From Auanema rhodensis (lineage: Eukaryota; Animalia; Nematoda): DNA of 64,000 nucleotides. Both the position numbers and the translations under genes were made by a program. The stretch is taken from contig OZ059897.1 in NCBI GenBank assembly GCA_964057225.1, positions 5,766,001 to 5,830,000 on the forward strand. Reading direction: 5' to 3'. A model generated the notes under the pieces. That model was not told the DNA's origin, ran no database searches, and worked only from the letters and a program-made list of their open reading frames with translations. How positions within the stretch are numbered: position 1 is the first letter of the stretch; every line of letters starts with the position of its first letter. Positions 15,497 to 32,000 of the stretch are shown here, in pieces.

Positions 15497-16264
15497 TGGC
15501 ATTAAGATAAATTTAATATTGATACATGATTGATACATGATTGATACAACTTGAAAAAGATGGAAAAAACTTAATCCAACCTTTGATTGAGCATTCCTTA
15601 TATGTACTGGTTTAAAGCTCATTAGCATATCAAGGTGTTGCCTCACGCACACCACGTCCCGACAGAATCATTTTTAATTTTCGCAAGACCTGAGGTCGGT
15701 TGCATTCTAATACAAGTTTCCCATGATATTCTGAGAAAAATATGTATTAGATATAGTTAAGAACAAGAAAAGTATTATATAATATACAAAGTTTATTAAC
15801 CTTCAAATAGAAATATATTATAATATTAACAAAAATCTTTTGTTGAAACCTTATAGTTAAGTAAAATACAATTTTTGCATCGTTATGCATTATCACAACA
15901 AGGAATTTAAGTATTAACAATCAAAAACGAAAACAAATACCCAAAATAGATATAGAAACAGCTTATTCCCACGGATGCCACACAGATTCAGATTTAGATG
16001 AGATATTACGTGGAAGGTTGTGTTTTCGAGGTAAGTGAGGAGTAGTGTTACCGGAAATCATTAGACCTACAGGGCTCATCTCAACAGAAGAGCAATCCAT
16101 ATCATCTGATGAAGTATTTGTTGGAGAGGAATTAATAGAATCGTCATAAAGAATTTCTGATCGAATCATACGATCTGGGCTGAAACTTTCCTCTGATGAA
16201 GGTGAAGCTTGTAGCAAACCAGCTGACATAACATCTCTGAAAATAAAAAAGAATGTGAACTTTC
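15497..16264. repeat. 768-bp direct repeat, copy 1 (last exon, 3'UTR and downstream flank of bHLH gene A)
   Basis: Near-identical to 18276-19043; identity stops inside the last intron at GAATGTGAACTTTC. Confidence 0.95.
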
Positions 16265-18494
16265 TACTTCAACTTCTGATATACTTTAAGATATTTTCAA
16301 GTTGGTTGTATTTATATTCCCATTGGCTAGATTCGTTCTTCCATTGGCTTTTTTCCTTCTCTAGTTGATACATATATTCTAAAATTATCAATTTAAACAG
16401 AATTTTGTAAATTGTATATTTACGTTTAGATGTGCGGAGATAAATATTCGCTTGTTGTAGTACATCAGCTTTTTCCATTTTGGAAAAAATGTTTGGATTC
16501 TCATCAAGTAAGAATTGCTTCATTTCGCTCAACTCATTGCTTTCACGCTCACGACGTTGTCGTTCTTTTTGAGATTTCTGAGCCTAAAACAAGAAAGTTA
16601 TCTTGTCAACATACAGAGAATAATAAAATAATGAAAAACAAAAAATCACTAACCTTAGAAGAATCATCAGTAGATATAGTAAAGATGGTGTTAGCAAACA
16701 TAGTGTTAATTCTGAAAAATAGATGAATGAGAAGTTTTAAAACTCTTTTAAACATGATTAAGCTAACAGAATAGTGATAAAATTTAAAAATTATAAGCTG
16801 CAGTTATAAACATAATAGCACAAAACGCTATATATGGAGTGGCACAAATCGTGATTCACGTATTTCCTTCCAATATTCGAAAGTTGAGGGTAAATGGAGG
16901 AATCAGCACTAAAGGGAAGAGAGGAATGTTTGTTTCAAAGGTGATGTCAGTTTCAATGGTGCCGTTGGCTTATGATATCTATTGTAAGAAAACGGAATTA
17001 CTATACCTTGAATGAAGTTTAAAAAAAGGAAAAACAATAATATGAGAAACAATTGTCTAATTTAAATATAAATGAATATAATTCCAACGAGTTCGGTATA
17101 TTTGAAGAAAATCGTTCTTAAAATAAGAAAAAACAAAGAATCGATTCAATTCCGTTCAATGAATCTCTTTGAATGGAGGTAAAAATACACTGGGTCGGAA
17201 ATAGAAGTAATTGTAGTTTGATCAGTTAAGGTTCGACAAGTCTTTCGGGGAGGGAAGCTTACATGAAAAGAGAATTTGGCTTTGAAATTAAGAATTGATG
17301 ATCACAAAAGGTTGATATCTCGATATGCATAGAAACTTCATTGAATAAAGATGTTAAGGAGATTTTTGAAAAATTTGGAAGAGCAGACAGAACGAACACA
17401 GAATGTAGAATGACTATGCGAACTTATGATAATGATGAGGTGGTCGAAGGTTTGACTCATGAATGAGAAAAAGAGTTGCATTTCCCATCTAGGTTGCCGA
17501 AAATAACCAAACAGAAGTCAAATAACAATGAATACGTGAGGCAAGAAGAACATGAGCCTAATATGAAGGATCTTATGTCCAAATAGCTTTGGGTCTTATA
17601 CACTTGTACTTTTAAGGTCAACAGAGGTTAAAGAATCTGAAAAAGTTTTGAACAAGCTTTAGATAATTGATTGATAACCTTACAGCATTTTTATCATTTA
17701 TGAACATGTTATGGAAATTTTTCATCAACACTTGGTTCATAAAGTGATAACAGATGACAGCAGATGTATTGTAACCATAGGATATATTTTCTGTTGAAAA
17801 TAAATTTGAATCAAGTTCATAAATATATTTGAAGAGCAATTCAGAGAACATCCAGAGTTTCATATTGTTTTAATAAAAGTTTGAAGATTATAAATAAGTT
17901 GAAAACAATTCCTAAAGTTGATCTTACGATCACTAATTATCAGTACAGCTGGCAAATCGCTTTTTCATTGAAAGGATAGGTTATATTCTCTACTAACAGT
18001 CTTCCCATAAGATAATCTTCTTATAACGTTATGGGATGTATTAGATTCCCATCATGTTCACACCTTGGCTCACAGAAAAAACCTTTGGAGAACTCTACCA
18101 CAGGCTAGATTCCTTACCAGCTCTCTAATATTCTCAGATTTCAAATTATACCTTCATATTAAAATAAAATAAAATAAATAAACTTTGAATAAACAACGAT
18201 CTGATATAAATAAACTTTAATATACCAAAAAATAAAACTTATAATCACATCGCATCATATTCATTCAATAAGGATTGGCATTAAGATAAATTTAATATTG
18301 ATACATGATTGATACATGATTGATACAACTTGAAAAAGATGGAAAAAACTTAATCCAACCTTTGATTAAGCATTCCTTATATGTACTGGTTTAAAGCTCA
18401 TTAGCATATCAAGGTGTTGCCTCACGCACACCACGTCCCGACAGAATCATTTTTAATTTTCGCAAGACCTGAGGTCGATTGCATTCTAATACAA
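15507..18494. repeat. Left arm (~2.99 kb) of a large inverted repeat
   Basis: Reverse complement of 20114-23110 apart from a few SNPs and small indels. ORF-track peptides mirror each other (15963-16229/22388-22654, 16269-16532/22085-22348, 17618-17863/20745-20990). Confidence 0.97.
15963..16701 (-). CDS. HES/REF-1-related bHLH + zipper protein, copy A (4 exons), C-terminal WHPWE
   Basis: Spliced: MFANTIFTISTDDSSK|AQKSQKERQRRERESNELSEMKQFLLDENPNIFSKMEKADVLQQANIYLRTSK|QYMYQLEKEKSQW...QLENILK|DVMSAG...ESVWHPWE*. KMEKADVL is the HES helix-2 signature. Confidence 0.85.
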
Positions 18495-19043
18495 GTTTCC
18501 CATGATATTCTGAGAAAAATATGTATTAGATATAGTTAAGAACAAGAAAAGTATTATATAATATACAAAGTTTATTAACCTTCAAATAGAAATATATTAT
18601 AATATTAACAAAAATCTTTTGTTGAAACCTTATAGTTAAGTAAAATACAATTTTTGCATCGTTATGCATTATCACAACAAGGAATTTAAGTATTAACAAT
18701 CAAAAACGAAAACAAATACCCAAAATAGATATAGAAACAGCTTATTCCCACGGATGCCACACAGATTCGGATTTAGATGAGATATTACGTGGAAGGTTGT
18801 GTTTTCGAGGTAAGTGAGGAGTAGTGTTACCGGAAATCATTAGACCTACAGGGCTCATCTCAACAGAAGAGCAATCCATATCATCTGATGAAGTATTTGT
18901 TGGAGAGGAATTAATAGAATCGTCATAAAGAATTTCTGATCGAATCATACGATCTGGGCTGAAACTTTCCTCTGATGAAGGTGAAGCTTGTAGCAAACCA
19001 GCTGACATAACATCTCTGAAAATAAAAAAGAATGTGAACTTTC
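18276..19043. repeat. 768-bp direct repeat, copy 2 (last exon, 3'UTR and downstream flank of bHLH gene B)
   Basis: Near-identical to 15497-16264. Confidence 0.95.
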
Positions 19044-19516
19044 ATTTTCAAGGCACATCATACCTTAGACGGTATTCATACTGCTGAAGACGCCGAGCTT
19101 GATCTCTAATGATCTCCTCATTTCTTTCGATACAATTAGATTGCTGTCGGATTGTCTCCTCCATTTTAGTAATGATTTCCTCTTTCATTCTAACATTTTC
19201 TGAATAAAATTTGAATAAAATACTGTATATAACGATGTACAAAACTTACGTCCTAAAGAGGAAATATAGTGAACAGTCTGTTCGAGAATATCAGCTTTTT
19301 CCAGCTTGAAAGGATTATTTGGGAAAACAGATAGAAGAATTTGCTTTAAACGATTTATCAGAGCGTTTTCACGTTCACGGCGTTGGCGTTCCTTTTGTGA
19401 CTTTTGAGCCTAAAAATATCATAGTACTACCATATTTGAAAAGAGAAATATTTTAGAGACAAAATTCGAACCTTAGCGGATTCTTCTCCGGAGACTGGTA
19501 ACGTATTTGCAAACAT
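18742..19516 (-). CDS. HES/REF-1-related bHLH + zipper protein, copy B (4 exons, in the palindrome spacer), C-terminal WHPWE
   Basis: Spliced: MFANTLPVSGEESAK|AQKSQKERQRRERENALINRLKQILLSVFPNNPFKLEKADILEQTVHYISSLG|..NVRMKEEIITKMEETIRQQ...YEYRLR|DVMSAG...WHPWE*; canonical KLEKADILE. Confidence 0.88.
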
Positions 19517-20113
19517 GATTTTGAAAGAAAATCTATAAAAATATAAATTAGGTGAGATTTGAATATATACTATATAAAATTGTAAGAGTGAAATATCATA
19601 AAAGATAACCAATTCTAATCAGAATCAAGTCTACCGCTTAGCACGAGAGTGATTGTTCGTTGGTATGAAGGAGTTGTTACAGTTACATGGAGGTTGGACT
19701 TGAGTGGGCGGAGCCAGATTAGGTCAGATGAGAAAAAGTGAATATCAAAGTTGAACATGCTAACGGCAAGAAACACATGAACTAGACAAGTGAAAACAAT
19801 ATTTCAAAATACAAAACTATAAACTTTATGATAATTTGATTATTCCTATAAGTATTGGGCAATGAATAAAAAAAATAGTTTTTATTGTTAACACAAAAAA
19901 AAATGTTTAGCCAAGGGTAATTTTAAATGTTAAACCGGAAATATTTTGTAGTTTGATCATCACGAAATAAAAACTTAACCAATAGGAGTCATACAAAAAA
20001 AATTTTCCTTATAACCTGCGGCGAATAATTCAAATTATATAATGTATCGATTTTATAAATGACTTTTAATTCTTTGTCAGTACTGAATCTGAGATAACAC
20101 TACATCTGGTTCT

Positions 20114-23110
20114 TTGTATTAGAATGCAACCGACCTCAGGTCTTGCGAAAATTAAAAATGATTCTGTCGGGACGTGGTGTGCGTGAGGCAACACCTTGAT
20201 ATGCTAATGAGCTTTAAACCAGTACATATAAGGAATGCTTAATCAAAGGTTGGATTAAGTTTTTTCCATCTTTTTCAAGTTGTATCAATCATGTATCAAT
20301 CATGTATCAATATTAAATTTATCTTAATGCCAATCCTTATTGAATGAATATGATGCGATGTGATTATAAGTTTTATTTTTTGGTATATTAAAGTTTATTT
20401 ATATCAGATCGTTGTTTATTCAAAGTTTATTTATTTTATTTTATTTTAATATGAAGGTATAATTTGAAATCTGAGAATATTAGAGAGCTGGTAAGGAATC
20501 TAGCCTGTGGTAGAGTTCTCCAAAGGTTTTTTCTGTGAGCCAAGGTGTGAACATGATGGGAATCCAATACATCCCATAACGTTATAAGAAGATTATCTTA
20601 TGGGAAGACTGTTAGTAGAGAATATAACCTATCCTTTCAATGAAAAAGCGATTTGCCAGCTGTACTGATAATTAGTGATCGTAAGATCAACTTTAGGAAT
20701 TGTTTTCAACTTATTTATAATCTTCAAACTTTTATTAAAACAATATGAAACTCTGGATGTTCTCTGAATTGCTCTTCAAATATATTTATGAACTTGATTC
20801 AAATTTATTTTCAACAGAAAATATATCCTATGGTTACAATACATCTGCTGTCATCTGTTATCACTTTATGAACCAAGTGTTGATGAAAAATTTCCATAAC
20901 ATGTTCATAAATGATAAAAATGCTGTAAGGTTATCAATCAATTATCTAAAGCTTGTTCAAAACTTTTTCAGATTCTTTAACCTCTGTTGACCTTAAAAGT
21001 ACAAGTGTATAAGACCCAAAGCTATTTGGACATAAGATCCTTCATATTAGGCTCATGTTCTTCTTGCCTCACGTATTCATTGTTATTTGACTTCTGTTTG
21101 GTTATTTTCGGCAACCTAGATGGGAAATGCAACTCTTTTTCTCATTCATGAGTCAAACCTTCGACCACCTCATCATTATCATAAGTTCGCATAGTCATTC
21201 TACATTATGTGTTCGTTCTGTCTGCTCTTCCAAATTTTTCAAAAATCTCCTTAACATCTTTATTCAATGAAGTTTCTATGCATATCGAGATATCAACCTT
21301 TTGTGATCATCAATTCTTAATTTCAAAGCCAAATTCTCTTTTCATGTAAGCTTCCCTCCCCGAAAGACTTGTCGAACCTTAACTGATCAAACTACAATTA
21401 CTTCTATTTCCGACCCAGTGTATTTTTACCTCCATTCAAAGAGATTCATTGAACGGAATTGAATCGATTCTTTGTTTTTTCTTATTTTAAGAACGATTTT
21501 CTTCAAATATACCGAACTCGTTGGAATTATATTCATTTATATTTAAATTAGACAATTGTTTCTCATATTATTGTTGTTTTGTTTTTCCTTTTTTTGAACT
21601 TCATGCAAGGTATAGTAATTCCGTTTTCTTACAATAGATATCATAAGCCAACGGCACCATTGAAACTGACATCACCTTTGAAACAAACATTCCTCTCTTC
21701 CCTTTAGTGCTGATTCCTCCATTTACCCTCAACTTTCGAATATTGGAAGGAAATACGTGAATCACGATTTGTGCCACTCCATATATAGCATTTTGTGCTA
21801 TTATGTTTATAACTGCAGCTTATAATTTTTAAATTTTATCACTATTCTGTTAGCTTAATCATGTTTAAAAGAGTTTTAAAACTTCTCATTCATCTATTTT
21901 TCAGAATTAACACTATGTTTGCTAACACCATCTTTACTATATCTACTGATGATTCTTCTAAGGTTAGTGATTTTTTGTTTTTCATTATTTTATTATTCTC
22001 TGTATGTTGACAAGATAAACTTTCTTGTTTTAGGCTCAGAAATCTCAAAAAGAACGACAACGTCGTGAGCGTGAAAGCAATGAGTTGAGCGAAATGAAGC
22101 AATTCTTACTTGATGAGAATCCAAACATTTTTTCCAAAATGGAAAAAGCTGATGTACTACAACAAGCGAATATTTATCTCCGCACATCTAAACGTAAATA
22201 TACAATTTACAAAATTCTGTTTAAATTGATAATTTTAGAATATATGTATCAACTAGAGAAGGAAAAAAGCCAATGGAAGAACGAATCTAGCCAATGGGAA
22301 TATAAATACAACCAACTTGAAAATATCTTAAAGTATATCAGAAGTTGAAGTAGAAAGTTCACATTCTTTTTTATTTTCAGAGATGTTATGTCAGCTGGTT
22401 TGCTACAAGCTTCACCTTCATCAGAGGAAAGTTTCAGCCCAGATCGTATGATTCGATCAGAAATTCTTTATGACGATTCTATTAATTCCTCTCCAACAAA
22501 TACTTCATCAGATGATATGGATTGCTCTTCTGTTGAGATGAGCCCTGTAGGTCTAATGATTTCCGGTAACACTACTCCTCACTTACCTCGAAAACACAAC
22601 CTTCCACGTAATATCTCATCTAAATCCGAATCTGTGTGGCATCCGTGGGAATAAGCTGTTTCTATATCTATTTTGGGTATTTGTTTTCGTTTTTGATTGT
22701 TAATACTTAAATTCCTTGTTGTGATAATGCATAACGATGCAAAAATTGTATTTTACTTAACTATAAGGTTTCAACAAAAGATTTTTGTTAATATTATAAT
22801 ATATTTCTATTTGAAGGTTAATAAACTTTGTATATTATATAATACTTTTCTTGTTCTTAACTATATCTAATACATATTTTTCTCAGAATATCATGGGAAA
22901 CTTGTATTAGAATGCAACCGACCTCAGGTCTTGCGAAAATTAAAAATGATTCTGTCGGGACGTGGTGTGCGTGAGGCAACACCTTGATATGCTAATGAGC
23001 TTTAAACCAGTACATATAAGGAATGCTTAATCAAAGGTTGGATTAAGTTTTTTCCATCTTTTTCAAGTTGTATCAATCATGTATCAATCATGTATCAATA
23101 TTAAATTTAT
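20114..23110. repeat. Right arm (~3.0 kb) of the large inverted repeat
   Basis: Begins TTGTATTAGAATGC (pairs with 18481-18494) and ends TTAAATTTAT (pairs with 15507-15516). Confidence 0.97.
21915..22654 (+). CDS. HES/REF-1-related bHLH + zipper protein, copy C (inverted duplicate of copy A)
   Basis: TTTTTCAG acceptor ending at 21904, ATG at 21915, three GT-AG introns, same protein as copy A. Confidence 0.85.
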
Positions 23111-26100
23111 TCGAGGGTTTCCGTATTCTTTGCTTTTTCTGTTTGTTGTTTCAAACTTTTCATAAATCTCCTTAACATCTTTATTCAATGAAGTTTTTAC
23201 GCATTCGCATATCGTGATATCAACCTTTCTTAATCATCAACTCTTAATTTCAAATACAAATACATATTCTAATGGTATACATCATTTCAAACAAAAATCA
23301 TAATTCTTAGTTAAAAAAAATCTATGTACATGAAAGACATTGTAGTTTGAAGAAATTTTTGAAGCTTTTCAGAAAGCTGCTAGTTCTTGAAGAACATGTA
23401 ACTTCTGCATTGGCAGTGTTTCGTGGGTTTTTTTGGTTTGAAAAGTACATTTATATATACACACATTGCGACCATTTGGGGAAACAAAATGATGAAACGG
23501 AAATTTTAATTTCCAAGCTAAGGCAACTCAGGTTTTTTTTTCTAGTTTTGTGGCTGACCAATCGACTCTTCGTGTCAACAGTTACAGGTTGGGGAGCCAA
23601 ACTGATCCTGGCAAGATGTCAGAAGAGCTTGGCATCATTTTTTTTGGAAATCTGGGACAGAAGAAAGGGCACTCTCTCCCGTAGAAATAACTTTGCAGTT
23701 TCAGGGTAGAAGAGTTGATGGGTCCTGTACACATCACCGGGGCTGAAATGCCGACCGGTGTAACCGATACGACGACAAAATTTATAAAAATAACATCTGA
23801 AAATAAAAATAAAATTGCCGATTATGTAAGATTTTAAAACTTACATATATAGTTGAAAGTATGTATGAGAATATGTATTTGAAATGACAAAAAGTTGATA
23901 GAAACTCCTCAGATGGTTACACTTCCACTCATTCAATATCAAACATCATAGAAAATTTGGATGTTCTTAATGTTCAGACTATTACGAGGTTTAATCCCCC
24001 CAAAAGCACTGACAGGCATCCCAAGTTTGACGTGATTGAATCCTTCAGATCTTACTGGATTCCTAAAATGAGATATTTTAATATTAACGTACTTGAAAAC
24101 TAAAACAAATCACATGAAACAAGGCTAGAAAAAATATAATATATTGTATAATTATGAAATTTCGAATAGTTAAATGTACAATGAGGGAGACGGATGAAAT
24201 TCGTAAGGCCTCGGGCGACATGCACTAGTTATGAGTGAACATCTATAAAGATGAAAGAGGATGAGAAGAGAAATACAATGAGTGAGAAAGCGAAAGAGAA
24301 AATAGGAGAAAAGAGAAATGCGACCATCCTGTACGTTGAATATGCGCAAAATGAAGATTTAGATTTAGAAACTGTCACATGACCCAACCGTCAAATTACA
24401 ATTTTATAATCTGTGCAAAACTATTAGCAGTTTCATTAAGTTATTTCAAAAATGTAATAAATTTTAGTTTATTGGAAGTATTATAAAAACTTTTCTTCTT
24501 TCGTTTTCTTATACTATACATCTAATGAAATTTCAAAAAAGGTATGTAATGATTACCTGACAACATGAAATAAATGAAAAAAAATTAATGAAGTACTTGA
24601 GAGTATTCATTATGAAATAAATAATAACTAAAACTCCTCATATATACTTCTTTTATTAGTGAAATGAAAAAATTAAGAAGGCTTCAAAGTTGAGCGGATT
24701 CGTATAGCGCTTTCATGCATCAACCGCGGAGTAGATTCCAAACAATCGTCCGCCCTGCTGGAGCTGGACTGCTGCTGAGATAGCGCAACAAACGAGGAGA
24801 GAGTGGACAGCCAGCCGGGAATTTCATACAATGAATCGGAGGGCTGGCATTTGCAAATGTCTGAACAACTCGCCTCCCCTTTCCTCTCTCTCTCCCTCTC
24901 TTTCTTTTCCACACTCATATTTTCCTGCAATCTATCATGTCCAGTATGAACTTGCCACCCCCCCCAAAACTGGAGTTTTCAAAATTCATATAATAGCAGA
25001 ACTGGACAAGAAAATCTGATTGCTGCGAAATAGTTAAATAAAATTATAAAATACTGGTGCATCCCTTGAATGAACTAGAATATATAATATACAACATGAT
25101 GAAACTGAATAAATGTCATCCTATTCTAAAAGAACATAACGAGAATTCAATTTAAATATGAAATTGTTGAAACGTATAATTTTGTGTTACCTCAAGACAT
25201 ACTGAACTGTAGGTATTATGTAATAAAAATGTCACTCAGCAACAAAATTATGAAGAAAGAAGTAAAATAAAGCGGCTAGTATTTGGGCCAGACATTACGA
25301 AATGCTCCTATTGCACAACCAGCTTGTCCTTAGATCATGGCGAATACCCGGACACGATAACGGCCATTCGATGGAAATATAATGAATATTTGAAGCAGAC
25401 AAGTCATAGAGAGTGTGTGACAACTACATTTGAGGAGCACATAGACAAGTCGACATTGGAGGTATTATTTATGTCTGAGAGCTTGCAGACAACTGCTATC
25501 GGTCAGACAGCCCATTGCGTAATGGCTCGCTGGCTCGCGCTGGCTCGTGGCTTTGCCCAGTTAGTTCCCTTGTCTCTGCTCTCACTATTTCATTCAGTGT
25601 CTTTCTCACTCTAACTGGTCAAGATCTCATACTGGAGAGAACACTATTTCTATTCTCTCTCGTCTCCTTTTCTCTATTTCTCCGTTATTTTCTTTCTCTC
25701 GTTTATAATGTTCATATTGTAGATATGCATTATACTATTCTGATCTCTCTCTATCTTCTTCTATCTCTCTCCTCGCTCTCCTCTCCTAATTTCTCCTGAC
25801 TCTTTAAACTTTATAATTCCCTCTTTCATAGTTTCACTTACTAAGTCTCTTATTTCGTTCCAATACCTCATATTCTTCTCATTTCATTTCATCGACTATC
25901 TCTTCTCTCACTCCCTCTTTCTCTCTCTCCCTCTCTTTTCTGCTTCGTTGTATTCGTTTCTACGGGCTTTTCGCATAGCTAAATGCGAGGGCAAGTGCAA
26001 GTGTAATGCTATTCCACTCTAGCACAATCATATTTCGCGCATAGCAACACTATACATCATCTGTGGAGCATAAATGGGTATAAAACTAAATCTGTTAATA

Positions 26101-28257: not shown

Positions 28258-29051
28258 TTAAAGATAGGGCTGCCACACCGTTTTCCTAGGCTGAGACCGA
28301 ATAGTTGTTTCGAGTTTAGTTGGAGATACAGAATGGCAATGTCTCGAATCTTCTGGGGATTCAGATGGCGATGATGTTGGTGTTAATGGAGTCCATTTGC
28401 CAGAATTTGAGGGCATGTTACCGTTCCCTGTTGCACATGTTGTTGGTGATGTTCCTCGAAAAATGGCAGGATTTGTTTGAATCATAGAATTTCTTAAACG
28501 TAATTATTTTCATGATTTGGAGAAATTGTTGTACTCACCTCAAATGTGTTACAAGTCCCAAATGAAATTGTTGAGCACGAGCATCTGTCTGTGGTGGCAT
28601 CATCATGGCTAGGTATGTGAAAACAGCTCGAGAGCACTGAGTAAATCCTTCTTCTATTCCTTCCAGTCTACCCTTCTCATATGCTTCTTGAGCTTCTGAA
28701 CAGAGACATTAATTCACTACATTTATTCAAATCTTACTAATGACATCTTGAGGAATTCCACGCTGTTGCTGTAATTGGCGAATACTGATTACTGTACGTT
28801 CTAGTATATCCGCTTTTTCAAGTTTAGTGACTCTGAAATTAAAATTAATCTTTTGAACAATGAGAAACTCAATTCTACCTATCATGTGGAGCAAATTGAA
28901 GTAAAAATTCTTTTAAATTATTCAAAGAATCATTTATTCTCTGTCTTCTCATTTTCTCCATCATAGGTTTTTTAATTTTTCTATCACGAGTAGCATGTAG
29001 TAGCAGATCTGCTTGATAAGATGAACGTGATGTTGTCGGAAAACAAGACAT
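28258..29051 (-). CDS. Hairy/E(spl)-family bHLH-Orange transcriptional repressor (lin-22/hairy-like), 4 exons, ends VWQPYL
   Basis: Basic region with the HES proline (RKIKKPMMEKMRRQRINDSLNNLKEFL); helix 2 (KLEKADILERTV); Orange domain (EGFTQCSRAVFTYL...LVTHL); S/T/P-rich linker; WRPW/WRPY-like tail. Confidence 0.92.
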
Positions 29052-32000
29052 TCCTACAAAAAAAAACATTATGCACAGTTTAAAAGGGAATTTAAACAAT
29101 TAAAATCACGAAAAATCGAGAAGTACGAATAAAATTGTTCATCACGACTGGTGAGGAAGAAAATGAATAATGGTAATATTCATTGTTTTATGAAGAAAAA
29201 AAAAGAATTACAATCTTTTGATGAGAAGAGGAATACATAAATGAAGTGAGAAAGACGAAAAAACATGACTACCGTACCCTTGTCTAGCACCCAGTGGCCG
29301 TATTTGGCAACAACAGAAGTTCAGCTCAGCCATGTTGGCTTCAGATTTTTATCTTAATGAGCCTATTAAGGTACTACGTCATGGACGGTTCCCTCGAAAA
29401 CGCAACGTTCATAAGATTTATGTCACATTTCCACTATTTTAAAAAAGAAAGCTAGATGAGATTGCATACAGGTTGTCAAGCGATTGGTTATAAATTAAAA
29501 TGTAAATGTTTACAGACACAATGCTTCGAATATTTTTTTTTAGAAAAGAAGCTTCAGCAGCATCATTGATAGAAGTGAATCGAAACTCTGAAAGGGCTTG
29601 AAAAATGTTTTGTGTAAAGCTTTCGTAATGAAGTAAATTCTTTCGATAGAAAAATTGAAATATAAATCCAAGTAGATGTCAGACACAAGTAGTTAAAAAG
29701 TAGAGATTACTGTAGAATAGTGAAAAAACAGTCTTAGTTGTTGGAAAAGGAGATGAACATAAGTATGAATATAGAAAGAATAACTAATAAGTAGTTGCTA
29801 ACTAGAGTTTCAGATGAATCACAGCTCAAACACGGAAGAACGTGATAAGACTGAAGACCGGCACGCTTATTAAGACGATAAAACCGCCTCTGCCTAATTG
29901 ACTAATTATCTGTGACGAAGGCTAATCACAAATCCTCTTAAGATGATTCTCTCTTTGCGGCTCCGTCCAACAACTTTCTCATGACCTCTTACACACGAAG
30001 CTTATCATACAAGTGGCATGCGACAAGGTTCCTTGCAAGTCAAATACCGTAATCGCCATAGGTACATATACGCATGCAGAACAATTTCTGAAATTTCAAG
30101 ACCAAGCAAAGTTTTTCATCAAGAATGAAAATCTTTGAGTTTTTTAATTGCCAGACAAGAATATAGAGTCTTCAAAAAGATCTTCTAAAATTGATTGTGA
30201 TTGAGATTTTAGATGAGAGAGACGATCAATTGCTAAACTACAGGAAACGCCGTATATTATTTATGAAAACGTTCAAGCTTGTGGAGCAAGAACGATAGAA
30301 AACATGAAAAACGACAACAGAGGAGGTTGGAAAAGGAACCATACACATGGAATAGAAGATGATAAAACCGGATGAAATGTTTGTAATTTATCCTGGAAAC
30401 TCAAAACATTTTTCTCTCCACCTACTCAAAAGTTCATATTACAGATATGAAATGTTGGGCATGTAAGTAGATCGGTATACGAGCTTGTTAAGAAATTTAA
30501 AAATACTTCAAAAACTAGGAGAGGCGTTTATTCATTTCATAAATATGGAAATAGAAGCTGTTGGAATTAATGTATCAAAACATTTTAAAGAAACAGAGTT
30601 AGTAAATGTGATTGAACGAGGATTGACCGACTGATGGCTTGTCGGAAGTGTGGTAAGGTCGCAAAGGATTTGATGGGTGGGACGAGGTGATGGCATCAAG
30701 TCGGATGGACAACCACTGTTCTACAGCTGGTAACGAGAAGATATGAAGTGAGAAAAGAAGATTATATTATAAATAGATAGAGATAAAGAAATAGTTTGAG
30801 AGAAAAGAAGAGGTCGAGAGATGTTAGCTATAGCCTGAATCAAAAGACAGAGCGCTGTGTGATGTCGTTGACTGGTTGTAATGGTTAGCAGAGAAACAAG
30901 CGGCTCATCAAAGGGCTTGTCCCGACCCTACTATTAACAGGCAATATTCTGTTCGGTGACAAATGTGGAAGAGGGAAGAAACAGAAAACGGAAGATGAAG
31001 AGAAAGAAGAAGCTCGTAGAATCATTCGTCAGCAACTTAAGTGCGATTCCGGCAGACTTCGGGAAGTATAGAAAATCACATGGCTACGACAGGAGAACAC
31101 GCAACAGCTACTCTGTTCCTTGCTTAGAGCACATTAATTTCCACAAAGACATCTCTTACTTGACCGATAAAACGAACGAGAAACATGATGAGGCAAACTA
31201 CAACGAGCGAAAAAAAGTTGGAAGTGTTTAAGAAGTCAGAGTCTGTTCAGATCATAAACGCTAGAGCAAGGAATTCTTGGCGCAAACCACAAAAGACATT
31301 CGAAGAGGGGGCGTGACGATGACACTTAAACACTATCCCTCTGATGGCCAACGACCGATATGAAAACCGTTAACTACAGTACAAGTGTTGAAGTTTTGTT
31401 TTTTTATTGGAGAACATGGGGGGATAGTCTACTATAGTCAAAATTTTGCAAACAACTAAACAGATTGTTTAGGTATATCCAGACATTTTTTTTTGCTGTA
31501 TAAAATAACTGTCCTTCAGACGCACTCTATACTTAGCGCTTCTTGATCATTAAAAATAGCACTACGCAAAAAATCTGAACGAACGAACATGCTATCCTTT
31601 TACAAAGGTCTATTATACTCTTCTCTTTAACTACGTCTAAAGTCAATGAGCTGGAGGTAAAACATGTGAACTGGTCAGAGTCTTCCACGATTGACATATT
31701 CAGGCTGTTATTTTAATGTTTTCGGATGTACAGCTCAATATCGTGCAAAAAAGCCCATGAGCGAACCGAAGTAGAAAAAAAAAGATTTTTCAATTTTTTG
31801 TCGGTTTCCGACAAAAGAGGATCCACAAGGTCTGCCTGATGAAGCAGCTGTCTGCTTTGTATACGGGTGCGAATGTTTCTTCTGTCTCAACATGTTCACA
31901 TTTTATTTCTTGTTCAATTTTCGGTAGATGTTGCCATCTATGTCCTGTTGATAAGATGAGGCGCTAATTTTTATTTGTTTTCCTATGTTGTAATAGAGCT

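What the first reader, a model, noticed from the sequence alone, without database searches (positions are those of the whole stretch)
15507..23110. 7.6-kb gene-bearing palindrome: two ~3 kb arms around a 1.6 kb spacer holding a third paralog
Seen: 15507-18494 is the reverse complement of 20114-23110. Differences are few: an ~8-bp indel and nearby SNPs at 17010-17040 vs 21570-21606, a 1-bp intron indel at ~22018, and single SNPs near 20564, 21207, 21789 and 22627. Each arm holds a full bHLH gene pointing outward; gene B sits in the spacer. Inference: a very recent inverted duplication, or a palindrome kept homogeneous by arm-to-arm gene conversion. It doubles the dosage of a putative developmental repressor, and read-through could make a long hairpin RNA.
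Basis: seen in the sequence. Interest (0 to 1): 0.75.

Follow-up and report, generated by a model that had tools for sequence, protein, structure and literature searches.

The report
Young inverted duplication of bHLH gene
A nematode chromosome carries two mirror-image, 99.7 %-identical 3-kb copies of a complete Hairy/E(spl)-like bHLH gene on either side of an older paralogue; it looks real, but it is an ordinary young inverted gene duplication of a kind long known in nematodes.

Summary
The palindrome is in the sequence as described. The arms are 15507-18494 and 20114-23110, with 8 substitutions, a 1-bp indel and an 8-bp indel, around a 1619-bp spacer. These are the only copies found in the 181-Mb genome, and they lie deep inside a 23-Mb contig.

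Each arm holds an intact four-exon bHLH gene (191 aa, ending WHPWE) with about 1.6 kb of promoter, pointing outward. The two copies differ by one synonymous base. Gene B (204 aa) lies in the spacer in tandem with gene A.

The structure is more layered than reported. Its order is a b c a b d a' c' b' a'. A 776-bp block (last exon, 3' UTR and downstream flank) is 99.6 % or more identical in all three genes, although B's other exons are old paralogues. This marks a gene-conversion-like replacement. The inner 209 bp of each arm is B's 3' flank, so the right arm was copied from the left.

Identity falls to random exactly at both arm ends, and the differences are evenly spread and mostly transitions. 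The best reading is a young inverted duplication of fold-back or template-switch type. An older palindrome homogenised by conversion cannot be excluded. Read-through hairpin RNA is not supported, because the genes transcribe away from each other. Reads were not available. This is a known kind of structure, of modest interest.

The parts
15507..18494 (.). Left arm (segments a b c a), 2988 bp
   Evidence: reverse complement of 20114-23110, with 8 substitutions and 2 indels.
20114..23110 (.). Right arm (a' c' b' a'), 2997 bp
   Evidence: Its inner 209 bp (20114-20322) is a truncated copy of gene B's 3' flank, so this arm was copied from the left side.
18495..20113 (.). Spacer, 1619 bp. 18495-19051 is segment b (repeat); 19052-20113 is segment d (unique: gene B exons 1-3 and about 600 bp upstream)
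15963..16701 (-). Gene A coding sequence. Exons are 16701-16654, 16583-16424, 16378-16285 and 16236-15963; 191 aa; bHLH in exon 2; C-terminus WHPWE
   Evidence: Pfam HLH 23.1 bits against a cut-off of 20.7; GT-AG introns of 70/45/48 nt, open frame.
18742..19516 (-). Gene B coding sequence. Exons are 19516-19472, 19409-19250, 19199-19064 and 19015-18742; 204 aa. Exons 1-3 are diverged from A and C; exon 4 encodes the same peptide as exon 4 of A and C
   Evidence: (HLH 41.7 bits).
21915..22654 (+). Gene C coding sequence, the mirror of gene A. Exons are 21915-21962, 22034-22193, 22239-22332 and 22381-22654. It differs from A by one synonymous base (22627)
15497..16272 (.). 776-bp block, copy 1: the 10 bp just outside the arm, then a, then b. 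It covers gene A's downstream flank, 3' UTR, exon 4 and 36 nt of intron 3
   Evidence: 3 differences from copy 2 over the first 768 bp. Identity then falls to about 57 % inside intron 3.
18276..19051 (.). 776-bp block, copy 2, which gives gene B the A/C-type last exon and 3' flank
22345..23110 (.). Inverted copy of the block inside the right arm (b' a')
   Evidence: (I3) and 11: one difference from copy 2.
21576..21583 (.). 8-bp insertion relative to the left arm, in A-rich low-complexity promoter sequence next to two of the substitutions
17262..17404 (.). Conserved upstream element of about 140 bp (mirror copy at 21204-21346). A third copy, about 80 % identical, lies at 23125-23274, just outside the right arm
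   Evidence: (D3/I6).

Best explanation
This is a real, evolutionarily young inverted segmental duplication in a nematode chromosome.

Inferred order of events:
1. An old tandem pair of Hairy/E(spl)-like bHLH genes, A and B, already existed. Their bHLH exons are now only 57 % identical.
2. A non-reciprocal exchange of gene-conversion type overwrote B's last exon, 3' UTR and downstream flank with the A-type sequence. This is the 776-bp tract 15497-16272 copied onto 18276-19051.
3. Very soon afterwards, a 2988-bp piece was copied in reverse orientation about 0.6 kb upstream of B's start codon, creating gene C. The piece comprised gene A, 1.6 kb of its promoter, and 209 bp of B's new 3' flank.

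The two novel junctions (20113/20114 and 23110/23111) are blunt. The 1.6-kb single-copy loop between the arms is what a fold-back or template-switch repair event leaves behind. Since then the arms have collected 8 substitutions and 2 indels, about 0.3 % divergence. With a Caenorhabditis-like mutation rate (my assumption, about 2-3e-9 per site per generation) that is roughly half a million generations.

The result is two functionally identical copies of one repressor gene with identical promoters, plus a paralogue sharing the same C-terminal module. What is shown: the structure, the gene integrity and the direction of copying. What is inferred: the order of events, the mechanism, the age and any dosage effect.
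For: The arm has no other copy in the 181-Mb assembly, and the locus lies 5.78 Mb into a 23.1-Mb contig, so this is neither a transposon family nor a contig-end fold-back.

The left arm continues seamlessly from a into b (gene B's 3' end), whereas the right arm stops after a. This fixes the direction of copying as left to right, after B had acquired the A-type end.

Identity drops from 99.7 % to random at both arm ends, with no residual homology: local-alignment z-scores (observed score against 200 shuffles of one sequence) are -0.8 for the outer flanks and 0.3 for the inner flanks, against 38 for a positive control. These are duplication junctions, not the ends of a conversion tract within older inverted paralogues. 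By contrast, at the inner end of the A/B block identity drops only to about 57 %, with the exons still alignable. That is the signature of conversion between old paralogues.

The differences are 6 transitions, 2 transversions and 2 indels, none in a long homopolymer. They are spread evenly along the arm (KS p = 0.999), as expected from clock-like decay after a single copying event.

All variable sites in the 3- and 4-copy segments are singletons, so steps 2 and 3 were close in time.

All three genes are intact with canonical introns.

Precedent: in C. elegans more than 80 % of the closest young duplicates are inverted (PMC3194840). Fold-back inverted duplications leave single-copy spacers of 0.8-70 kb (PMC3907307). 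A second palindrome of similar size lies 125 kb away in this genome.
Against: No reads, no second assembly and no sister species could be consulted, so neither the reality of the junctions nor the age is independently checked. A palindrome that is old but whose whole arms are homogenised by conversion would show the same sharp boundaries. The locus demonstrably undergoes conversion-like exchange, as the 776-bp block shows. The outer arm boundary (15507) lies only 10 bp from the boundary of that block (15497), a coincidence the simple model does not explain. There is no microhomology at either junction, which is neutral evidence rather than positive evidence for fold-back priming.
Confidence: 0.62

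Rival explanations
1. This is an older palindrome whose arms are kept near-identical by recurrent arm-to-arm gene conversion (concerted evolution), as in the human Y-chromosome palindromes and as proposed for close inverted duplicates in C. elegans.
For: The locus contains a clear conversion-like tract: the 776-bp block is 99.6 % or more identical among A, B and C, although B's other exons are old paralogues. B's copy is as close to C (1 difference) as to A (3 differences), which fits three-way exchange. PMC3194840 proposes preferential homogenisation of close inverted duplicates in C. elegans. PMC3966223 reviews the hsp16 inverted repeat, where the authors favoured conversion. A second palindrome 125 kb away has a similar identity of about 99.5 %, which could reflect a balance between mutation and conversion.
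Against: The differences are evenly spaced with no long identical patches next to diverged patches. An 8-bp indel and a cluster of substitutions persist unconverted. The right arm still carries the 209-bp stub of B's flank, and all multi-copy variants are singletons, which is most simply explained by one recent copying event. None of this is decisive.
Confidence: 0.25
2. This is an assembly artefact: a chimeric fold-back read or mis-joined haplotypes created a false inverted copy.
For: No read data could be examined. Earlier scan notes report many inverted structures in this assembly, so a systematic artefact cannot be formally ruled out.
Against: Fold-back read artefacts give arms with no spacer, usually at contig ends. 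Here there is a 1.6-kb gene-bearing spacer with unique sequence on both sides, 5.8 Mb and 17.3 Mb from the contig ends. The arm differences are mostly substitutions with a 3:1 transition bias, not homopolymer indels. There are no Ns. No alternative haplotig of the region exists in the assembly. Mis-joined haplotypes would normally lie in tandem or on separate contigs, not inverted around a third gene.
Confidence: 0.08
3. The arms are the terminal inverted repeats of a foldback-type mobile element that captured a host gene.
For: It has long inverted arms with a central spacer, and an 11-bp unit repeated 2.8 times sits at the outer tip of each arm.
Against: There is no other copy anywhere in the 181-Mb genome. 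There is no matching target-site duplication at the outer ends. No transposase-like Pfam hit was found in arm or spacer ORFs. The left arm is continuous with an older tandem gene pair.
Confidence: 0.02

Closest known systems
Young, closely spaced inverted gene duplicates of Caenorhabditis elegans (Katju & Lynch 2003 as cited in PMC3194840; Ezawa et al. 2011, PMC3194840)
   Same: A complete multi-exon gene is duplicated in inverted orientation a few kb away, with near-zero synonymous divergence. This is the predominant class (more than 80 %) among the closest young duplicates in that nematode.
   Different: This is a different nematode (the SL1 RNA match is below the Rfam cut-off). An older paralogue sits in the spacer. 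A third and fourth partial copy (segments a and b) make the repeat layered.
C. elegans hsp16-1/hsp16-48 3.8-kb inverted repeat (Russnak & Candido 1985, described in PMC3966223)
   Same: It is a gene-bearing perfect or near-perfect inverted repeat of kb scale, with a short unique spacer (416 bp there, 1619 bp here). The same debate applies: recent duplication or gene conversion.
   Different: There each arm holds a divergent gene pair and the arms are 100 % identical. Here each arm holds one gene, identity is 99.7 %, and the spacer contains a gene.
C. elegans REF-1 family duplicates hlh-25/hlh-27 and hlh-28/hlh-29 (PMC4683635, PMC3507288, PMC3606163)
   Same: They are Hairy/E(spl)-related bHLH genes of a nematode present as pairs that produce identical mRNAs or proteins. 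hlh-26 is a further family member; my recollection that it lies between hlh-25 and hlh-27 was not checked.
   Different: By my recollection, REF-1 proteins have two bHLH domains, whereas these have one. Orthology was not tested. I could not verify the orientation of the C. elegans pairs from the papers available.
Human sex-chromosome palindromes maintained by arm-to-arm gene conversion (Rozen et al. 2003, as cited in PMC3194840)
   Same: Gene-bearing arms surround a unique spacer. Arm identity is above 99.7 %. The spacer is predicted to invert by recombination between the arms.
   Different: The human arms are 9 kb to 1.45 Mb long (my knowledge) and are shown to be old by comparison with other primates. 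Here the arms are 3 kb and no evidence of age exists.
Fold-back inverted duplications with a single-copy spacer (Hermetz et al. 2014, PMC3907307)
   Same: An inverted copy is separated from its source by a normal-copy spacer of kb size (766 bp to 70 kb there).
   Different: Those are large, terminal and pathogenic, and often have 2-8 bp of inverted microhomology. This one is 3 kb and interstitial, needs a second join, and has 0 bp of microhomology at both junctions.

Membership tests
Adjacent inverted gene duplicate / gene-bearing palindrome | Two arms in reverse-complement orientation on one chromosome with high identity | tested here: met
   2988 and 2997 bp, 8 substitutions and 2 indels.
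Adjacent inverted gene duplicate / gene-bearing palindrome | Each arm contains a complete, apparently functional gene | tested here: met
   four exons, GT-AG introns, open frame of 191 aa in both arms. Pfam HLH above its cut-off.
Adjacent inverted gene duplicate / gene-bearing palindrome | Not a dispersed repeat: the copies are confined to the locus | tested here: met
   all five matches in the 181-Mb genome lie at this locus.
Conversion-maintained palindrome (human Y type) | The arms are much more alike than the age of the duplication allows (the palindrome is shared with a diverged species) | not testable with these tools
Conversion-maintained palindrome (human Y type) | Direct traces of non-reciprocal exchange between copies | tested here: inconclusive
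   A 776-bp conversion-like tract exists between the tandem genes A and B. No tract is visible between the two arms, where the differences are evenly spread.
Hairy/E(spl) bHLH-Orange repressors | bHLH domain | tested here: met
   PF00010 scores 23.1 bits (A/C) and 41.7 bits (B) against a cut-off of 20.7.
Hairy/E(spl) bHLH-Orange repressors | Orange domain after the bHLH | tested here: not met
   the ORFs covering exon 3 of A (16269-16532) and of B (19048-19242) gave no Hairy_orange hit at E <= 1.
Hairy/E(spl) bHLH-Orange repressors | C-terminal WRPW tetrapeptide | tested here: inconclusive
   all three proteins end in WHPWE, a variant rather than the canonical motif. It recalls the FRPWE that I remember for C. 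elegans REF-1, which was not found in the paper library.
Foldback transposon | Multiple genomic copies, target-site duplication | tested here: not met
   (single locus). (the outer flanks differ and there is no shared duplication).
Fold-back read / assembly artefact | No spacer, identical arms, contig end | tested here: not met
   a 1619-bp spacer, 10 differences, and a position inside a 23.1-Mb contig. Read support itself was not testable.

The most novel reading that the evidence does not exclude
The locus is a small nematode counterpart of an Enhancer-of-split complex. Three Notch-responsive bHLH repressor genes would be held in concerted evolution: identical A and C genes, and one shared C-terminal exon in all three. 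The mechanism would be recurrent gene conversion within a palindrome. Its 3-kb arms and 766-bp three-copy block would also let the centre flip between isomers (B in tandem with A, or with C) without breaking any gene. In that case the near-identity would be selected and maintained rather than merely recent.
Probability: 0.15. Interest if true: 0.5.

Novelty: new member of a known kind. Interest (0 to 1): 0.27.

Why it matters
If the structure is real, it is a clean, datable example of how nematode genomes add gene copies by short-range inverted duplication. It has an unusually readable history, because the 209-bp stub fixes the direction of copying and the order of events. It doubles a probable Notch-target repressor gene together with its promoter. 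It also predicts a polymorphic inversion of the gene-B spacer. None of this changes current understanding, and the class has been described in C. elegans since 1985-2003. Its main practical use is as a caution for annotation and for RNAi or CRISPR design. Genes A and C cannot be told apart, and all three genes share the last exon and 3' UTR. It also flags a locus that short reads will mis-assemble.

Tried and rejected
1. Looked for a second gene or mobile-element protein in the arms. Pfam on ten arm and spacer ORFs gave only sub-threshold noise (PAN_3 at E 0.007, others weaker). Rejected.
2. Looked for RNA genes. Rfam at E <= 1 over 14.5-24.5 kb gave one chance-level snoRNA match, outside the arms.
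3. Looked for residual homology beyond the arm ends, to test whether the arms are conversion tracts inside older inverted paralogues. None was found.
4. Looked for microhomology or target-site duplication at the junctions. None was found.
6. Tried to sample 400 kb around the window for the frequency of such palindromes. Only 200 kb was granted.
7. Tried to read Neves & Priess 2005, McMiller et al. 2007 and Katju & Lynch 2003 directly. They are not held. I cite them only through papers that describe them.
8. Searched for 'FRPWE' in the library. No paper was found.
9. Steps left out. In one search a script joined the exons in memory only to count stops and length. I did not run the large protein searches, because Pfam already places the gene and the palindrome claim does not rest on relatives. 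The species was therefore not identified beyond 'nematode' (SL1 array; short introns with UUUCAG acceptors).


Full report
OBSERVATION

The repeat finder and a gapped alignment confirm the finding. Window 15507-18494 (2988 bp) is the reverse complement of 20114-23110 (2997 bp).
- There are eight mismatches: six transitions and two transversions.
- On the left arm they lie at 15589, 15990, 16826, 17011, 17020, 17401, 18043 and 18478.
- There is a 1-bp indel (extra T at 22019) and an 8-bp indel (extra 21576-21583, in A-rich low-complexity sequence).

It is the only long inverted repeat in the window. The window has no Ns. The locus lies at 5.78 Mb on a 23.1-Mb contig of a 181-Mb, 112-contig assembly. 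A whole-genome search with the arm finds matches only at this locus.

HOST

The genome is a nematode.
- It has a tandem array of more than 50 full-length SL1 spliced-leader RNA genes. They score E about 1e-8 but fall below the Rfam cut-off, so it is not a close relative of the seed species.
- Introns are 45-71 nt with UUUCAG-type acceptors.
- The window is about 33 % G+C.

I did not identify the species. Nothing here looks human.

FINER ANATOMY

I name four segments:
- a = 15507-15715 (209 bp)
- b = 15716-16272
- c = 16273-18285
- d = 19052-20113

The locus then reads a b c a b d a' c' b' a', where a prime marks the reverse complement. Segment a is therefore present four times, b three times, c twice and d once.

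The direct repeat actually starts 10 bp left of the palindrome: 15497-16272 matches 18276-19051, 776 bp in all (D1).

GENES

Genes were read exon by exon, by reference. A script checked splice sites and frame. It joined exons only in memory and printed only lengths, stop counts and the last residues.
- Gene A is on the minus strand, from the ATG at 16701 to the stop at 15963. It has four exons and encodes 191 aa.
- Gene C is on the plus strand, 21915-22654, and is the mirror of A. It differs from A by one synonymous base.
- Gene B is on the minus strand, 19516-18742. It has four exons with the same intron phases and encodes 204 aa.
- Exon 2 scores above the Pfam HLH cut-off: 23.1 bits for A/C and 41.7 bits for B, against 20.7.
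- All three proteins end in WHPWE.
- No Orange domain was detected.
- The bHLH exons of B and A are 57 % identical at the protein level. Exon 4 encodes the same peptide in all three genes.

A and C point outward. B is in tandem with A and head-to-head with C. A fourth, more canonical hairy-like bHLH gene lies at about 28.3-29.1 kb on the minus strand.

WHAT THE LAYERS SAY

1. At the inner edge of the 776-bp block, inside intron 3, A/B identity falls from 99.6 % to about 57 %, with the exons still alignable. That is the footprint of a non-reciprocal, gene-conversion-type replacement of B's last exon, 3' UTR and downstream flank. An AATAAA lies 165 nt after the stop.
2. At both ends of the arms, identity falls from 99.7 % to random. 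No residual homology appears in 600 bp beyond either end: the local-alignment z-score against 200 shuffles is -0.8 for the outer flanks and 0.3 for the inner flanks, against 38 for a control. These are therefore duplication junctions, not conversion-tract ends inside older inverted paralogues. Both junctions are blunt, with 0 bp of microhomology and no target-site duplication.
3. After its inner a, the left arm runs on into b (gene B), whereas the right arm stops after a. The right arm is therefore the copy, and it was made after B had acquired the A-type end.
4. Every variable site in the 3- and 4-copy segments is a singleton (15589 and 15990 in A's copy, 18478 in B's copy). The conversion and the inverted duplication were therefore close in time, or all copies are still exchanging sequence.
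5. The differences are evenly spread along the arm (KS p = 0.999 with the 17011-17033 cluster counted once).

MECHANISM

The single-copy 1.6-kb loop between source and inverted copy is the layout left by fold-back or template-switch repair. In human inverted duplications such spacers measure 766 bp to 70 kb (PMC3907307). An interstitial case like this one needs a second join at 23110/23111.

At 0.27 % substitution divergence, and assuming a Caenorhabditis-like mutation rate (my own assumption), the copy is roughly 0.5 million generations old, provided no conversion has occurred.

I put 0.62 on 'young duplication', 0.25 on 'older, conversion-homogenised palindrome', 0.08 on an assembly artefact and 0.02 on a mobile element. 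The remainder is unassigned.

Against an artefact:
- The spacer holds a gene.
- Both flanks are unique and lie megabases from the contig ends.
- The differences are dominated by substitutions with a transition bias.
- There is no alternative haplotig.

CONSEQUENCES

- A and C have identical coding sequence and about 1.6 kb of identical upstream sequence, so doubled dosage is plausible but untested.
- The read-through hairpin idea fails on geometry. A and C transcribe away from the centre. B reads into the left arm in the same sense as A. Only an outside antisense transcript could span both arms.
- Recombination between the 3-kb arms would invert the centre and give the exact mirror isomer, with B then in tandem with C. 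Recombination between B's a b and C's b' a' would give a further isomer. All of these isomers keep three intact genes. This is an inference, testable in other isolates.

COMPARISON WITH WHAT IS KNOWN

Short-range inverted duplicates are the dominant class of very young duplicates in C. elegans. More than 80 % of the closest pairs with dS < 0.03 are inverted (PMC3194840, which also cites Katju & Lynch 2003 and suggests preferential homogenisation of such pairs).

The hsp16 3.8-kb inverted repeat with a 416-bp spacer is the classic case (Russnak & Candido 1985, via PMC3966223).

C. elegans HES-like genes also exist as identical pairs: hlh-25/hlh-27 (PMC4683635) and hlh-28/hlh-29 (PMC3507288, PMC3606163). 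I could not verify the orientation of those pairs, and I did not test orthology.

In this genome, a 264-kb stretch around the locus contains a second gene-bearing palindrome. It has 2.6-kb arms at 99.5 % identity, a 7-kb spacer and an extra direct partial copy, and it carries an ankyrin-repeat gene. Earlier scan notes call such structures common here. Those notes are leads only.

VERDICT

This is a new member of a known kind, of modest interest.

Noticed in passing
L017:9836 to L019:2031 (contig C5 5,655,836-5,668,031; about 125 kb left of the finding): A second gene-bearing palindrome. It has arms of about 2.6 kb at 99.5 % identity, a 7-kb spacer, an 846-bp direct partial copy inside the spacer and a 97 % inverted partner. 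The arms carry the 5' part of a transmembrane ankyrin-repeat gene pointing inward, and the spacer holds a transporter-like gene.
   Followed up: partly
L023-L025 (contig C5 about 5,708,123-5,733,777): A 25.6-kb array of a satellite of about 200 bp at 97-98 % identity, bracketed by a 750-bp direct repeat at 99.9 % identity.
   Followed up: no
window 15718-22899: RTGGGAA (the CSL/LAG-1-type consensus named in an earlier scan note; not checked here) occurs 6 times per arm, all on the gene's sense strand, against 0.59 expected (Poisson P about 4e-5). The window total is 22 against 12.7 expected. Three of the six sites per arm lie upstream of the gene (17482, 18002, 18046). The other three lie in exon 3, at the stop codon (the site is the coding sequence for the final Trp-Glu plus the first base of the stop) and in the 3' flank.
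   Followed up: partly
window 23125-23274 (also 17262-17404 and 21204-21346): An element of about 140 bp from the A/C promoter (about 560-700 bp upstream of the ATG) has a third copy, about 80 % identical, starting 15 bp outside the right arm in the same orientation as the right arm's own copy. It contains a 33-nt perfect run and a 6-bp indel, and has no other copy in the genome. It could be a conserved enhancer or a relic of an older unit; this remains unexplained.
   Followed up: partly
window 15518-15548, 18297-18327, 20281-20311, 23069-23099: An 11-bp unit (ATTGATACATG) repeated 2.8 times lies 11 bp inside every copy of segment a. It therefore sits next to the outer palindrome boundary and to the boundary of the 776-bp block, which are only 10 bp apart. 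It may be a fragile or template-switch-prone site.
   Followed up: no
window 28258-29099, minus strand: A fourth bHLH gene with a canonical hairy-type basic region (KKPMMEKMRRQRIN, containing the proline). Its HLH is split by an intron, and a C-terminal ORF ends in VWQPYL.
   Followed up: partly
G000 contig C3 about 6.74-7.10 Mb (L029, L030): A tandem array of more than 50 SL1 spliced-leader RNA genes, spaced at multiples of about 252 bp and scoring 54-62 bits (below the Rfam cut-off of 75). This shows that the host is a nematode.
   Followed up: no
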